A stretch of 64,000 bases of DNA, taken from assembly GCA_025558095.1 (NCBI GenBank), contig JAIVFI010000007.1:806001-870000 (forward strand), in the 5' to 3' direction. The translations under genes were made by a program, and so were the position numbers. Numbering within the stretch: the first letter of the stretch is position 1; each line of letters starts with the position of its first letter. The notes below the pieces were generated by a model, which was not told where the DNA came from, did no database searches, and was given only the letters and a program-made list of their open reading frames with translations. This stretch comes from Hyaloraphidium curvatum SAG 235-1. Its lineage: Eukaryota; Fungi; Monoblepharomycota. This document shows positions 1 through 15,554 of the stretch, piece by piece.

Positions 1-3000
1 ACCTGCCCGGCTGGTCCGGCATGTTCCACCGGATGGAGACACACCCCTCCGAGGCGCCCGCCGGCACCAGGGTGATCTTCATGGAGTACGTCGCCGTCCA
101 GTCGATCATGCAGCGCTCGTCGATGGAGGCTCTAGCCCGGCACTCGGGCTGGAACCCCGATTGGCAGCCCTTCGGGGAGTGGCTCGCCCAGGCCGACCCC
201 ATCCGGCCCAAGAAGCAGCTCAACTCGGTGCAGCACGCCAGCGCGGTGGCATACCTCGACCAGAGCTCGGAGCGGCGCGAGGCGCTCGAGAACGAGATCG
301 AGACGTCGCTGCTCCAGGCCATCGGCAGCAAGGGGCTGCCCCCGGCGCTGCCCTACGGTCCCGCCGCGGCCGCTGCTGCCGCCACCGACTCTGCCGCCTC
401 GAACCCCCCCCTCGCCGCCGCCTCCCCCGCTACCGCCTCTGCCGCCGCCCCACTCCCCCGCCCCAAGCTCCAGATGTACACCTGCATCGACGACCGGGAA
501 TGCTCCCTCCGCCGGCACGTCGAGGCCGAGGACCCCGGCGCGATCCAGACCTTCGGCGTTGCCGGCTTCTTCGGCGTTCCCATCCGGTACCGCCCCGCCG
601 ACGGCCGCGACGAGATGGTGCTCGCCCCCGAGGGCCAGAACCCCAACGCGGAGCTGGTCGAGGGCGAGGAGCGCAGCCACGAGGGCGAGGTGCGCGCGTA
701 CAACCGCAGGCGCAGGGTGGTGGCCTGGTTCGCGCAGGCGTGGGAGCGCATGTCCTTCTCGCCGTCGGGGTCGCTGGTGCTCTCGGCGTTCGCGCCCTTC
801 TCGCTGGCCAGGCTGGTGCTGACGGGCTACTCGCCCGACACCAAGCAGAAGGTCCGCGATTGGTTCAACCGCACCTTTTTGCCCAAGCCGCATACGGACT
901 TTGACCTGCCCTTCACCGCGGACCGCGCCGCCGCGCTGCTCGCGCGCACCTTCAAGAGCATGGGCGCCGACCGCCGCTGGGCTCCGCTGGTGCTGGTCCT
1001 CGGCCACGGCGCCTCGTCGGTCAACAACCCCTACGCGGCGGCGTACAACTGCGGCGCGTGCGGCGGGCGCGAGGGCGGGCCCAACGCGAGGGTGTTTGCC
1101 CGCATGGCCAACGACCCCGCGGTGCGGGCGCACCTCAGGGACGCGCACGGGATCCCGGTGCCGGACGACACGGTGTTCGTCGGCGGGGCGCACAACACGA
1201 CGGTGGACACGGTCGAGTACTTCGACGAGGACGACATCCCCGCCTCGCACGCGGCCGCATTTGCCGAGGTCAAGGGGATCGTCGGCCGCGCGCTGGGCGA
1301 GAACGCGCTGGAGCGGTGCCACCGCTTCCTGCTGGCAAAGAACATCACCACGCCCGAGGCCGCCCTGCGGCACGTGTGGACCCGCTCGATCGACCCCGCG
1401 GAGGTGCGGCCCGAGCTCAACCATGCTTCCAACGCCGCGGTGGTGGTGGGGAGGAGGGACCTGACCAAGGGGAGCTTCTTTGACCGGCGCGTGTTCCTGC
1501 CTTCGTACGACCCCGGGGCGGATGACGCGGCGGGAACCAACCTCGAGGGCGTGCTCGCGCCGGCGCTGATCGTCTGCTCCGGGATCAACCTCGAGTACCT
1601 CTTCTCCACCATCTCGGCGGACCGGCACGGATCGGGCACCAAGACCCCGCTGAACGTGGTCGGCAACATCGCCGTGCTCCAGGGCACCTCGGGCGACCTC
1701 CGCACCGGCCTCCCCAGCCAGATGACCGAGATGCACGCGCCCGTGCGGGCCCTCTTCGTCGTGGACGCGCCGACGGCCCGGGTGGAGGCGGTCCTGGGGC
1801 GGCGCGAGGAGCTCCGCCGGCTGGTGCACAACGAGTGGGTGCGCCTCGTGGTCCGCGACCCCGACACGGGGGTGTTCTACCGGTACCACGATGGCGCCTA
1901 CTCCGAGGCCTCGGAGCACCTCGCCGCCCCTCCGGTGCCGCTGCGGACGCGGTACCAGATCCAGCGCGAGTACGGGCTCCGCGTCGCCCGCCGCGAGGCG
2001 CTCATGTACAACGCCTCGGTGGCGGGGATGGCGGCCGCGACGGTGCTGCCGATCTGGCTGTGGGGCCCGGTGGCGATGAACCCGTACGGGATGGCGGTCG
2101 CAGCGTGCGCGGCGCTGCTGTCGTTCCCCGTGCTCGCGTTTTCGAAGAGGTACCTGCACGGGGAGTTCATGTTCGGGCGGTTCGCGTCGCTGTCGGCGGC
2201 GCTGCTGCTGGGGTTCAACATGGTGGCCACGGCGCCGAGCTTGGAGCACACCATGCTCGGGTGGAGCCTGTTCGGGTTTGCTTCGACCTTCCTCATCGGC
2301 TCGTACAACGACCGGCCCACGGTGCGCAACAACGCGACCTTCGCCTTTGCCGCCTACCGCATTTCGGACTTTGCGCTGCTGACGGCGGCCACTTTTGCCG
2401 CGACCGGACACCAGAACCTTGCCGTGGTCTCGGCGGGCCTGCTCGTGGCCGCGCTGTGGAAGAGCAGCCAGTTCCCGCTCACGGGCCTGTTCGTGCGGTC
2501 GATGGAGGGGCCCACGCCGACGAGCGCGCTCGGCTATGCCGGGCTGTCGGCCCACGTCGGCGTCGTGCTGCTCGCGGGAACCATGCCCTACTGGTACCCC
2601 TTCGAGTGGGCGCGGATCACGCTGGCTTCGCTGGGATTGTTTACGGCCGGGTACAGCACGCTGGTGGCCAAGATCCGCTCGGACCGCAAGGGATCCGTGG
2701 CCCGTGCGACGTCGGCGACCCTCGGACTGATCTTCGTCACCCTGGCCGCGGGCTACCCCGCCGTGGCGCTGCTCATGGCGCTCGGCCACGCGGCGTTCCG
2801 GATGATCCAGATCCTGCGCGCGCCCAACGTGATCGCCGACTCGCAGTTCCTCCGCGCCGCCCTCGGCAAGATGCCCTGGCCGCGCGTGGTGCCCGACAGA
2901 CTGTACCGCTTCGTGTGGGCCCTGCGCCGGATCGACAACGACGTGCACCTGCTCAGCGTGCTCAACTGGATCGGCGGGCACCTGCACCTCCCCAGCGCGC

Positions 3001-3431
3001 GCAAGCTGAGCAAGCTGCAGCAGTGGGCGCTGACGGCCGTCGGCGTGGTGATTGCCGGCGCGCCCTTCACCCCGCTATCGCACGGGCTGGAGGAGTGGCT
3101 CATGCACACCCTGCCCGAGCACACGTTCGTGGCGGTGATGGTGATGGTGGCGCACTTTGGCCTCTCGGTGGTGGTCATCCGCTACCTGCTCACGCAGGTG
3201 CTCAGCGCGCGGAGGTTCAGGCGGTCAAGCGCGCTGGCGCTGCCGCAGGCGCTGGCGCAGCAGAAGGTGCCGGCGCCGGGCGCGGTGGCCAAGGCCGGCG
3301 ACATGGTCAGGCCCTCGGCAGGTGCGTTTTCCAGAGGCAGGCGGTTGGGATCATCGACTGATTGGACTTTTGTTCCTGCAGGGCCCGTGAACGGTACTCA
3401 GGTGGTCGACATGACCAAGGCCGCAAAGTGA
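1..3431 (+). CDS. DabA-DabB (MpsB-MpsA-like) fusion: DUF2309 beta-CA-like domain plus NuoL/MrpA-like membrane domain; putative inorganic carbon transporter, 5'-truncated
   Basis: The frame is open to the window edge (LPGWSGM..., itself a DUF2309 motif). DUF2309 motifs: CIDDRECSLRRH, GVAGFFG, LGHGASSVNNPYAAAYNCGACGG, HNTT, RPELNHA, RRVFLPSYD, INLEYLFS, GDLRTGLPSQM. From ~nt 2000 a polytopic domain: SKRYLHGE, YRISD, KSSQFP, SMEGPTPTSA, GHAAFR. Probable in-frame intron 3322-3381 (GTGCGT..CTGAT..CTGCAG). Confidence 0.93.
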   Translation, partial: LPGWSGMFHRMETHPSEAPAGTRVIFMEYVAVQSIMQRSSMEALARHSGWNPDWQPFGEWLAQADPIRPKKQLNSVQHASAVAYLDQSSERREALENEIETSLLQAIGSKGLPPALPYGPAAAAAAATDSAASNPPLAAASPATASAAAPLPRPKLQMYTCIDDRECSLRRHVEAEDPGAIQTFGVAGFFGVPIRYRPADGRDEMVLAPEGQNPNAELVEGEERSHEGEVRAYNRRRRVVAWFAQAWERMSFSPSGSLVLSAFAPFSLARLVLTGYSPDTKQKVRDWFNRTFLPKPHTDFDLPFTADRAAALLARTFKSMGADRRWAPLVLVLGHGASSVNNPYAAAYNCGACGGREGGPNARVFARMANDPAVRAHLRDAHGIPVPDDTVFVGGAHNTTVDTVEYFDEDDIPASHAAAFAEVKGIVGRALGENALERCHRFLLAKNITTPEAALRHVWTRSIDPAEVRPELNHASNAAVVVGRRDLTKGSFFDRRVFLPSYDPGADDAAGTNLEGVLAPALIVCSGINLEYLFSTISADRHGSGTKTPLNVVGNIAVLQGTSGDLRTGLPSQMTEMHAPVRALFVVDAPTARVEAVLGRREELRRLVHNEWVRLVVRDPDTGVFYRYHDGAYSEASEHLAAPPVPLRTRYQIQREYGLRVARREALMYNASVAGMAAATVLPIWLWGPVAMNPYGMAVAACAALLSFPVLAFSKRYLHGEFMFGRFASLSAALLLGFNMVATAPSLEHTMLGWSLFGFASTFLIGSYNDRPTVRNNATFAFAAYRISDFALLTAATFAATGHQNLAVVSAGLLVAALWKSSQFPLTGLFVRSMEGPTPTSALGYAGLSAHVGVVLLAGTMPYWYPFEWARITLASLGLFTAGYSTLVAKIRSDRKGSVARATSATLGLIFVTLAAGYPAVALLMALGHAAFRMIQILRAPNVIADSQFLRAALGKMPWPRVVPDRLYRFVWALRRIDNDVHLLSVLNWIGGHLHLPSARKLSKLQQWALTAVGVVIAGAPFTPLSHGLEEWLMHTLPEHTFVAVMVMVAHFGLSVVVIRYLLTQVLSARRFRRSSALALPQALAQQKVPAPGAVAKAGDMVRPSAGAFSRGRRLGSSTDWTFVPAGPVNGTQVVDMTKAAK

Positions 3432-14387: not shown

Positions 14388-14870
14388 TCCGAACCATCGT
14401 CCCGCGCGGATCGGCGGACCATCATGAGGGCGAATGCCCCAAGACGAGACGGTGGAAAGAAGCGTATGAAACTTTTCCGCTCCGTTCCAGGGTCGAGAAG
14501 GCGCAATCGCGGTCAATCTGGCGCGAGAAGCGCGGTTGTCCCTCGGCGATCCGATCGGCGAGAGTCAGGCAGTCAGTCAATAACACCCGATTCGGAAACC
14601 AACAGCCTTCATCCATAGAAGAGCACCTCTGTCGTCAGATCATGACTCGAAACTGATTGATGTTTACCTTAGCTTCGGGGAAGATGACGACGGTGAACGT
14701 CCCCCGTATCCAATTGCGTCACGAGTTTCCTCACGAATCGGAGCTGAAATGTCTTCCGGAGGCTCATTCGCCAGTCCAACCGACCTTCTGTTTGGCTGAT
14801 GGCGAGAGCTGCCGGTGCTCCCTTCTGGGCTTCAGTTCTCGCATGGTGGCAAAGGACGGCTCCCTTCTAT

Positions 14871-15554
14871 ATGCCCTCCGCCGCGCGCGTCTTCCTCGTC
14901 GCCGCCATCGCTGCCTCCGTCTCCCGCGCGCCGCTATTCCGCTCCGCCGCCCCGGCCGCCCGCATGGCGTCCTCGCTGCCCCGCGGCGCCGCGTCGCCGG
15001 CAGACGTTCTCGCGTTCTGGTTCCCCGAGCAGCCGCCAACCAAATTCCGCAAAGAGTGGTTCCAAAAGGACGCCGAGTTCGACAAGGCTTGCGCCTCGTT
15101 CGTGCCGACGCTCGATGCCGCTGCCCGGGGCGAACTCGACGCGTGGAGAAAGGAACCGAAGTCCGCGTTGGCGCTCATCATCGTGGCGGATCAATTCCCG
15201 CGCAACGTGTACCGCGGCACCGCCAAGGCCTTTGCGACGGACCCGCTGGCGTTGTCCGTGGCCAGGGAGGTCGTGGAGAAGGGCTGGATGAAGGAGCTCG
15301 TGCCGTACGAGCGGTGGTTCGTCCTTTTGCCGTTCGAGCACTCGGAAAACATAAAGGACCAGGACGAGAGCGTGCGTCTGGCGACGGATCTGGTTGCTGA
15401 CCACGCCGAGTCGGCGCCGGCGCTCCGGTTCGCGGAGCAGCACAGGGAGGTGATTGCGAAGTTCGGGAGGTTCCCGCACCGCAACGACGCGCTGGGGCGG
15501 AAGTGGACGGACGAGGAGCGCAAGTACATTGCCGAGGGCGGGCACGCTTTCTGA
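14871..15554 (+). CDS. DUF924 family protein, possible N-terminal targeting peptide, intronless
   Basis: VLAFWF, WFQKDAEFD, LALIIVADQFPRNVYRG, LPFEHSE, HREVIAKFGRFPHRN. Confidence 0.9.
   Translation: MPSAARVFLVAAIAASVSRAPLFRSAAPAARMASSLPRGAASPADVLAFWFPEQPPTKFRKEWFQKDAEFDKACASFVPTLDAAARGELDAWRKEPKSALALIIVADQFPRNVYRGTAKAFATDPLALSVAREVVEKGWMKELVPYERWFVLLPFEHSENIKDQDESVRLATDLVADHAESAPALRFAEQHREVIAKFGRFPHRNDALGRKWTDEERKYIAEGGHAF

What the first reader, a model, noticed from the sequence alone, without database searches (positions are those of the whole stretch)
1..3431. Prokaryotic DAB/MpsAB inorganic-carbon pump encoded as a single fused gene in a eukaryote
Seen: one continuous frame carries a DUF2309/DabA catalytic region with CxD (CIDD, ~483-494), His (LGHG, ~1005) and Cys (NCGACGG, ~1050), followed directly by a NuoL/MrpA-like membrane domain (~2000-3220). 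All neighbours are intron-containing eukaryotic genes. Known: DabAB (Halothiobacillus) and MpsAB (Staphylococcus) are membrane-potential-coupled vectorial CO2-to-HCO3- systems described from prokaryotes, usually as two genes with the membrane subunit first. Inference: a horizontally acquired operon was fused in A-B order so it can be expressed from a monocistronic eukaryotic mRNA. This would give a probably heterotrophic eukaryote an energised bicarbonate-concentrating system, e.g. for anaplerotic or lipid carboxylases. I know of no characterised eukaryotic example.
Basis: partly seen in the sequence, partly recalled or inferred. Interest (0 to 1): 0.95.

Follow-up and report, generated by a model that had tools for sequence, protein, structure and literature searches.

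The report
Bacterial CO2 pump family in eukaryotes
A fungus, and about a hundred other single-celled eukaryotes, carry a one-piece version of a bacterial membrane enzyme that uses a proton gradient to turn CO2 into bicarbonate, and its address tags suggest it works in mitochondria (and perhaps in plastids of some marine algae), a setting not reported before in the papers we could search.

Summary
Window 1-3431 is the 3' part of an intact Hyaloraphidium curvatum gene with two GT-AG introns. It encodes DabA (PF10070, 6e-160; Cys-Asp-Arg/His/Cys zinc site intact) fused to a NuoL-like DabB (PF00361). An upstream exon adds a mitochondrial-presequence-like N-terminus.

It is not a one-off transfer. 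About 110 DabA-DabB fusions form one eukaryotic clade in both halves (Paulinella, Fabomonas, Amoebophrya, a dinoflagellate, many metagenomic protists). 32 of 53 extended N-termini look mitochondrial; one algal subclade looks plastid-targeted.

The source is the bacterial dabA-dabB-nuoM-like operon ('clade C'), already in A-B order. The fusion dropped DabB helix 1, the beta-hairpin and the NuoM partner. This subtype has His where DAB1/DAB2 have a conserved Leu.

Best reading (about 50%): an inner-membrane, proton-motive-force-coupled CO2 hydratase feeding matrix bicarbonate. Main rival: a loosely coupled membrane-anchored carbonic anhydrase.

A second, actinobacterial-type DabB-DabA fusion lies on another contig; the scan's readers noted it earlier. 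No eukaryotic DAB appeared in the searched literature. Localisation, expression in this fungus and activity are untested.

The parts
1..3321 (+). Rest of exon 2 of the dabA-dabB fusion gene. Exon 2 starts at G000:C7:805318. Exon 1 (C7:805140-805267, presequence-like) and intron 1 (C7:805268-805317) lie before the window.
   Evidence: public model P0001 (1384 aa) uses the same intron
3..1841 (+). DabA domain (end of the helical N-terminal domain plus both beta-carbonic-anhydrase-like domains)
   Evidence: PF10070 E 6e-160; model best matches beta-CAs 1ddz Z 10.6 and CsoSCA 8thm Z 10.4
483..497 (+). CIDDR: zinc ligand Cys423 and the Asp-Arg dyad (numbering of P0001)
   Evidence: aligned to C351/D353/R355 of DabA2; invariant in 85 eukaryotic and 37 bacterial rows
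555..635 (+). Lid: GVAGFFG motif, and LAPEG where bacteria have Cys-Pro (Ala in 74/85 eukaryotes, Cys in 33/37 bacteria)
735..880 (+). Membrane-inserting finger/elbow helices of DabA; no Glu at the DabA2 E444 site
   Evidence: alignment to 9rd0_A, alignment A1, model helices
1005..1067 (+). Zinc ligands His597 and Cys612, and the NNP...CGACGG coupling loop (Asn at the DAB1 D708 site in 80/85 eukaryotes)
1407..1424 (+). RPELNH: His736 stands where DAB2 has Leu658 and DAB1 Leu825; Leu replaces the Trp of RPEWGL
   Evidence: alignment to 9rd0_A; His in 85/85 eukaryotic and 37/37 clade-C bacterial rows; Leu in most actinobacterial and DAB2-like proteins
1842..1994 (+). End of DabA and polar linker that replaces DabB transmembrane helix 1
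   Evidence: alignment A5; the model aligns to NuoL only from NuoL residue about 26
1995..3215 (+). DabB (NuoL/ND5-like) membrane domain, starting at helix 2 and lacking the beta-hairpin. Keeps D1051, K1082, E1097, H1113, D1156, K1158, H1191, R1195. Has Tyr1107 at the DAB1/2 channel His. Lacks the helix-5 Glu (Ser1017, 2265) and the first helix-11 His (Met1187, 2775).
   Evidence: PF00361; VIA Z about 30, rmsd about 3 A over about 315 residues to NuoL chains; residue counts
3322..3381 (+). Intron 2: 60 nt, GT-AG, in frame, with a CTGAT branch-like site; lies in the unconserved tail
   Evidence: sequence; absent from P0001
3382..3431 (+). Exon 3 and stop codon

Best explanation
A nuclear-encoded, single-chain DAB of a eukaryote-wide but patchy family, imported into mitochondria. 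SHOWN: domain order, intact zinc site, NuoL-like fold, family, single origin, bacterial source operon type. INFERRED: the Arg-rich, acid-free N-terminus takes the chain into the matrix; DabA sits on the matrix (N) side; the DabB part inserts into the inner membrane from helix 2 onward (loss of helix 1 keeps the topology right for an N-terminal DabA). Protons flowing from the intermembrane space through the Lys/Asp/His/Arg chain drive gated, one-way hydration of respiratory CO2 to bicarbonate, as in bacterial DAB1/DAB2. The bicarbonate would serve matrix users such as the presequence-bearing biotin carboxylase on contig C28. In one marine algal subclade the protein appears redirected to the plastid.
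For: Pfam and PDB matches; model pLDDT 87, pTM 0.89; folds. Catalytic residues and the DabA-DabB bridge (N813, G823, D1156; equal to DAB1 N901, G911, D277 by spacing, PMC13684180) are near-invariant in the family. Channel residues D1051, K1082, E1097, H1113, K1158, H1191 and R1195 are kept in 101-103 of 103 eukaryotic rows. N-termini: 32/53 eukaryotic extensions pass a crude rule (at least 3 R/K and at most 1 D/E in 30 residues) against 3/39 bacterial ones, Fisher p 1e-7. In this gene the first acidic residue of P0001 is at 104. Coupling of bacterial DABs to the proton motive force: PMC13684180, 10.64898/2026.03.13.711513.
Against: The genome has a beta-CA with a presequence-like N-terminus, which would short-circuit a concentrator in the same compartment (argument as in PMC8552792). 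The eukaryotic clade lost the helix-5 Glu, the first helix-11 His and the NuoM-like partner, and has Tyr at the His that is essential in DAB1/DAB2 (Tyr is shared with clade-C bacteria, for which I found no functional test). The Trp whose mutation uncouples DAB2 is Leu here. No pyruvate carboxylase domain was found. The targeting rule is crude: P0001 as annotated from the second ATG fails it (2 R in 30 residues), and it scored two signal-like N-termini as mitochondrial.
Confidence: 0.5

Rival explanations
1. An organellar, membrane-anchored but loosely coupled or reversible carbonic anhydrase: the His at the Leu658/Leu825 site restores the canonical beta-CA hydrogen-bond donor, and the membrane part serves as anchor, proton exit or potential sensor rather than as the energy source.
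For: His736 is invariant. The papers link the Leu to low basal activity. W656 and C494 changes uncouple DAB1/2, and these sites are Leu and Ala here. Two channel residues and the NuoM-like partner are lost. A presumably mitochondrial beta-CA coexists.
Against: L658Q did not give DAB2 in vitro activity. Seven ionisable channel residues and the interface Asn/Gly/Asp stay conserved across the whole family, more than an anchor needs. DAB2 also lacks the helix-5 Glu and is still coupled.
Confidence: 0.22
2. Coupled DAB chemistry, but at another membrane (plasma membrane or other), capturing CO2 for cytosolic carboxylases such as PEP carboxylase and acetyl-CoA carboxylase; this is the first reader's picture.
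For: The genome has PEPC and several biotin carboxylases. Alveolate members lack a presequence-like N-terminus. A cytosolic start at a later Met cannot be excluded.
Against: No signal peptide; a presequence-like extension here and in most complete members. The second DAB on C18, which seems to begin directly with membrane helices, fits the secretory route better.
Confidence: 0.12
3. It runs the other way or moves another ion: it uses a CO2/bicarbonate disequilibrium to move H+ or Na+, or acts as a Na+/bicarbonate system as proposed for MpsAB.
For: The clade-C operons carry extra NuoM-like subunits and often SulP (PMC5700660 proposed energy conversion). The channel differs from DAB1/2. MpsAB was argued to use Na+.
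Against: DAB1 and DAB2 data support proton-driven hydration; the eukaryotic form lost the extra subunits.
Confidence: 0.1
4. Contamination, misassembly or a decaying relic.
For: No reads could be laid. Most of the gene is free of introns.
Against: Two spliceosomal introns, host-like GC3, an 890-kb contig with intron-broken neighbours, an intact 1.4k-codon frame, membership of a eukaryote-only clade, transcript-derived homologs in Paulinella and Fabomonas, and both DAB types again together in run SRR26194948.
Confidence: 0.02

Closest known systems
DAB2 of Halothiobacillus neapolitanus (DabA2/DabB2, PDB 9rd0; 10.64898/2026.03.13.711513)
   Same: Zinc site Cys2-His with Asp-Arg dyad, beta-CA-like core, finger helices, NuoL-like partner without the helix-5 Glu, no third subunit.
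   Different: One chain in A-B order; DabB helix 1 and beta-hairpin gone; His for Leu658; Leu for Trp656; no Glu444; Tyr for His260; organelle-type N-terminus; eukaryotic.
DAB1 of Thermocrinis albus / H. neapolitanus (PMC13684180)
   Same: GxAGFFG lid, NNP...CGACGG loop, bridge equivalent to N901/G911/D277, helix-11 His312 and basic residue at Lys316.
   Different: No DabC; E704 and D708 not kept; H229 is Tyr, H308 is Met/Leu, L825 is His, C494 is Ala.
Bacterial 'clade C' ybcC-nuoL-nuoM(-sulP) operons (PMC5700660); here in Myxococcota, Planctomycetota, Bacteroidota, Acidobacteriota, Methylococcaceae, Nitrosomonas
   Same: A-then-B order, His736, Tyr1107 plus His1113, Arg1195; nearest relatives of both halves (about 40-49% in DabA).
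   Different: Bacterial genes are unfused (0 of 81 loci), keep helix 1, the helix-5 Glu and the first helix-11 His, and mostly have NuoM-like partners. I found no functional test of this subtype.
Single-chain actinobacterial DAC (Acidimicrobium ferrooxidans type; PMC6689103)
   Same: Both domains in one polypeptide.
   Different: Opposite order (B-A), RPEWGL Leu type, separate clade. The second H. curvatum gene on contig C18 belongs here; the window's gene does not.
MpsAB of Staphylococcus aureus (PMC6689103, PMC8552792)
   Same: PF00361 plus PF10070 supplying bicarbonate to a heterotroph.
   Different: Two genes, membrane subunit first, proposed Na+ coupling.
Cyanobacterial NDH-1MS/MS' (Cup) CO2-hydrating complexes
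   Same: Vectorial CO2 hydration on a NuoL-like subunit in an energy-transducing membrane.
   Different: Unrelated catalytic subunit and redox-driven within complex I. The loss of helix 1, hairpin and helix-5 Glu argues against docking of this protein into complex I (inference).

Membership tests
DAB/DAC/MpsAB family | PF10070 DabA domain with beta-CA-like fold | tested here: met
DAB/DAC/MpsAB family | Zinc ligands Cys2-His and Asp-Arg dyad | tested here: met
   C423, D425, R427, H597, C612; zinc binding itself not measured
DAB/DAC/MpsAB family | PF00361 NuoL-like partner linked to DabA | tested here: met
   fused
DAB/DAC/MpsAB family | Conserved ion-translocation residues in DabB | tested here: inconclusive
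   D1051, K1082, D1156, K1158, H1191, R1195 kept; H229/H260 site is Tyr (with an invariant His six residues on); H308 site and helix-5 Glu lost
DAB/DAC/MpsAB family | Membrane-potential-dependent accumulation of inorganic carbon; rescue of CA-free E. coli | not testable with these tools
   needs experiment
DAB1 subtype | DabC subunit; strictly conserved NNPYESALDCGACGG and RPEWGL motifs | tested here: not met
   motifs differ; no DabC gene seen next to the fusion (neighbours identified; not searched genome-wide)
DAB2 subtype | Leu658, finger Glu444, His260, dabB-dabA order | tested here: not met
Actinobacterial single-chain DAC | DabB-DabA order and membership of that clade | tested here: not met
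   (met by the C18 gene instead)
Clade C (ybcC upstream of nuoL homolog) | A-B order and phylogenetic placement of both halves | tested here: met
   shared His736 and Tyr1107/His1113. Identity with the paper's clade C rests on gene order and neighbours, not on its tree.
Clade C (ybcC upstream of nuoL homolog) | NuoM-like and SulP genes alongside | tested here: not met
   the only PF00361 matches in the nuclear assembly are the two DABs; SulP-family genes exist but are unlinked
Mitochondrial matrix/inner-membrane proteins | Cleavable N-terminal presequence and import | tested here: inconclusive
   composition only; no targeting predictor or experiment available

The most novel reading that the evidence does not exclude
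An old eukaryotic gene family, possibly dating to near the last eukaryotic common ancestor and lost in animals, plants and most fungi, encodes a mitochondrial proton-driven one-way carbonic anhydrase of an untested DAB subtype. Abundant marine algae have redirected it to the plastid as an unrecognised part of their CO2-concentrating mechanism (in one alga it lies head-to-head with an iota-type carbonic anhydrase gene).
Probability: 0.3. Interest if true: 0.92.

Novelty: new variant of a known kind. Interest (0 to 1): 0.78.

Why it matters
DAB pumps are described as bacterial and archaeal (10.1101/476713, PMC10880623, PMC13684180). A single-origin eukaryotic family with organelle-type N-termini would add an energised CO2-to-bicarbonate step to mitochondrial biology and possibly to algal carbon concentration. 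It also offers natural tests of open mechanistic questions: a DAB with His at the 'strictly conserved' Leu, Tyr at the 'essential' channel His, and no Glu444. A compact, nuclear-encoded, one-chain, organelle-addressed DAB is what attempts to raise bicarbonate in plant chloroplasts lack (background: PMC8438413, listed, not read). That one fungus holds two DABs of independent origin points to real selection on inorganic-carbon supply in a heterotroph.

Tried and rejected

Fused A-B genes in prokaryotes: a single-query GTDB scan found nothing; an alignment scan kept the best 80 of at least 595 loci, none fused. The ESM Atlas clusters nearest by features were bacterial fusions, none recorded as eukaryotic.

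Mitochondrial (alphaproteobacterial) origin: no named alphaproteobacterium among the 80 nearest genomes (three unclassified 'Pseudomonadota' MAGs aside); the donor is unresolved beyond environmental operon L020.

Displaced nad5: rejected; the DabB half groups with clade-C DabB and shares its Tyr/His signature (no nad5 was included in the tree).

Conserved linkage to iota-CA: seen in one alga, not in a second.

Naming hosts of environmental copies through neighbours or accessions failed.

Literature: ten searches on DUF2309, PF10070, COG3002, DabA, MpsAB and related terms gave no eukaryotic DAB (among them). Subscription journals are mostly missing from the library.

Pyruvate carboxylase (PF02436) and alpha-CA were not found in the genome; absence is not proven.

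I built no joined gene model. Homolog searches used exon 2 by reference; the whole public protein P0001, as returned, went to alignments, the NCBIfam scan and the Atlas search.
Full report
OBSERVATION. Frame 3 of the window is open from base 3 to the stop at 3429-3431. Pfam finds DabA over codons 1-613 (E 6e-160) and Proton_antipo_M over 746-946 (E 2e-10). The best solved relative is DabA2 of Halothiobacillus (9rd0_A, E 6e-57), whose C351, D353, R355, H524 and C539 align with CIDDR at 483-497, His at 1005 and Cys at 1050. The window is G000:C7:806001-870000 of a 31.9-Mb, 55-contig assembly. A protein from the same assembly is named Hyaloraphidium curvatum by NCBI, a non-photosynthetic early-diverging fungus (own knowledge).

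GENE STRUCTURE. The gene begins upstream. An ATG at C7:805140 opens 42 codons with five Arg and no acidic residue. A 50-nt GT-AG intron follows, then exon 2 with a Cys/His/Gly-rich stretch and the start of DabA. The public model P0001 uses this intron, starts nine codons later, and also removes a 60-nt in-frame intron at window 3322-3381. Neighbours are intron-broken genes, and GC3 matches the host. I built no joined model; homolog searches used exon 2 by reference, and P0001 was used only as returned by the tool.

A EUKARYOTIC FAMILY. A search with the membrane half returned about 100 proteins of 800-1500 residues with both domains, 41-66% identical; a search from an algal-type member added a few more. 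Named members are Paulinella chromatophora (transcript), P. micropora, Fabomonas tropica (transcript), Amoebophrya sp. A25 and MMETSP0359 (a dinoflagellate, from memory). All ten A-B members whose contigs were inspected sit among eukaryotic-type or unannotated genes, none in a bacterial operon (Las1, mitochondrial carriers, RCC1-HECT, Ints3, DENN, BCS1). DabA-core, DabB-half and whole-protein trees each recover the fusions as one clade (SH-aLRT 97-99), sister to one unfused environmental bacterial operon, L020. Within it the two Paulinella group together (94), the alveolates group together (99), and Hyaloraphidium falls with Fabomonas (99). This is compatible with old vertical descent and many losses, but Rhizaria and alveolates do not group, so paralogy or eukaryote-to-eukaryote transfer is not excluded. 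The trees are quick searches without bootstrap; bacterial DabA and DabB were concatenated in the script. Prokaryote-style gene calling in the databases hides intron-rich copies, so the count is a lower bound.

BACTERIAL SOURCE AND HOW THE FUSION WAS MADE. The nearest GTDB loci are from Myxococcota, Planctomycetota, Bacteroidota, Acidobacteriota, Methylococcaceae and Nitrosomonadaceae. In 70 of 71 loci with a partner in view, dabB follows dabA, often with abutting or overlapping stop and start; none is fused. One or two NuoM-like genes and sometimes SulP follow. This matches 'clade C' of PMC5700660. So the A-B order was inherited. The alignment shows bacterial DabB helix 1 replaced by a polar linker and the beta-hairpin deleted, and the model aligns to NuoL only from residue about 26 (Z about 30, rmsd about 3 A). 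NuoL helix 1 runs from outside to inside (own knowledge), so dropping it is what lets a soluble N-side DabA lead into helix 2. The helix-5 Glu, present in 58/59 bacterial DabB, survives in 2/103 eukaryotic rows. That Glu faces NuoM in complex I (own knowledge), which fits the loss of the NuoM-like partner: the nuclear assembly has no PF00361 gene besides the two DABs.

CATALYTIC AND CHANNEL RESIDUES. The model is confident (pLDDT 87, pTM 0.89), and the DabA core alone matches beta-carbonic anhydrases best (1ddz Z 10.6, CsoSCA 8thm Z 10.4). Zinc ligands, dyad, lid Gly motif, coupling-loop Asn and the N813/G823/D1156 bridge are conserved (DAB1 equivalents in PMC13684180, assigned by spacing). 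Differences from the tested DABs: His736 replaces the Leu that both structure papers call conserved (85/85 eukaryotic, 37/37 clade-C rows); Leu replaces Trp656; the lid Cys is Ala; Tyr1107 replaces the essential His229/260, with an invariant His six residues later (shared with 59/59 bacteria); the first helix-11 His is lost in eukaryotes only; there is no Glu444. D1051, K1082, E1097, H1113, K1158, H1191 and R1195 are kept in at least 101 of 103 rows. The protein is thus a DAB, but neither DAB1 nor DAB2.

WHERE IT WORKS. Of 53 eukaryotic members with an N-terminal extension, 32 pass a crude presequence rule, against 3 of 39 bacterial extensions (p 1e-7). Related sequences are not independent, and some starts are mis-called. 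A well-supported marine subclade (P0090, P0091, P0092, P0096, P0169) instead has a hydrophobic signal followed by a Phe/Tyr/His-started, Arg/Ser/Pro-rich stretch, as in complex-plastid targeting (interpretation from own knowledge). In one such alga, seen on 55 contigs including Tara samples, the gene lies head-to-head with a metal-independent (iota-type) carbonic anhydrase gene; a second algal locus lacks this neighbour. Alveolate members lack an obvious presequence.

MECHANISM. Most likely (0.5): import into mitochondria, DabA in the matrix, and proton entry through the DabB part gating one-way hydration of respiratory CO2, by analogy with the models in PMC13684180 and 10.64898/2026.03.13.711513. 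A biotin carboxylase with a presequence-like N-terminus on C28 is a candidate user. Against this, a beta-CA on C17 also has a presequence-like N-terminus, and a reversible CA would drain a concentrator unless the two are expressed apart (cf. PMC8552792). The main rival (0.22) is a loosely coupled membrane CA, favoured by His736 and the lost residues, and opposed by the conserved channel and by the inactive L658Q mutant of DAB2. Another membrane (0.12), another ion or direction (0.10) and artefact (0.02) follow.

SECOND DAB. Contig C18 (about 695,500-700,200) holds an intron-broken DabB-DabA fusion, only about 32% identical over the DabA core. Its nearest named relatives are actinobacterial single-chain proteins, and it groups with them. 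Run SRR26194948 holds relatives of both genes. These are two independent acquisitions.

NOVELTY. Ten literature searches gave no eukaryotic DAB; the reviews and structure papers read place the family in Bacteria and Archaea only. The library lacks most subscription journals, and database annotations of these proteins exist without comment. Verdict: a new variant of a known kind, namely an apparently undescribed eukaryotic, organelle-addressed family from an untested DAB subtype. Interest 0.78.

Noticed in passing
L010:1500-6200 (G000:C18 about 695,500-700,200): Second, independent DAB: an intron-broken DabB-DabA fusion of actinobacterial type; no presequence seen.
   Followed up: partly
L115:6434-7555 (marine alga, Tara): Iota-type (metal-independent) carbonic anhydrase gene head-to-head with the plastid-like DAB fusion; a GAPDH gene without a targeting extension lies on the other side.
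   Followed up: partly
L017:966-2084 and L013:9456-9602: A mitochondrial carrier gene (in L017 it resembles the phosphate carrier, by eye) lies head-to-head with the DAB fusion in two related eukaryotic contigs.
   Followed up: no
L127, L129, L130, L131 (G000:C4, C12, C7, C38): Four biotin carboxylase genes whose N-termini carry PTS2-like nonapeptides (R-L/V/I-x5-H/Q-L), suggesting peroxisomal carboxylases.
   Followed up: no
L124 (G000:C34:59,600-63,300): Intron-containing PEP carboxylase gene in a fungal genome, while no pyruvate carboxylase domain (PF02436) was detected.
   Followed up: partly
L112, L113, L114 (G000:C17, C5, C44): Three beta-carbonic anhydrase loci; the C17 one has a presequence-like N-terminus.
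   Followed up: partly
L008:5370-5490 (before the window): Cys/His/Gly-rich stretch between presequence and DabA; His-rich stretches occur here in 6 of 38 long-extension members.
   Followed up: partly
P0124, P0515, P0517: Alveolate members are divergent, lack presequence-like N-termini, and the two dinoflagellate-type ones have lost the Tyr and His of the helix-8 motif.
   Followed up: no
L022-L101: Clade-C bacterial DAB operons (dabA-dabB-nuoM-like, one or two copies, sometimes SulP) with His at the Leu658 site; no functional study found.
   Followed up: partly
window 14799-15554: Intronless DUF924 ('bacterial protein of unknown function') gene with an N-terminal extension.
   Followed up: no
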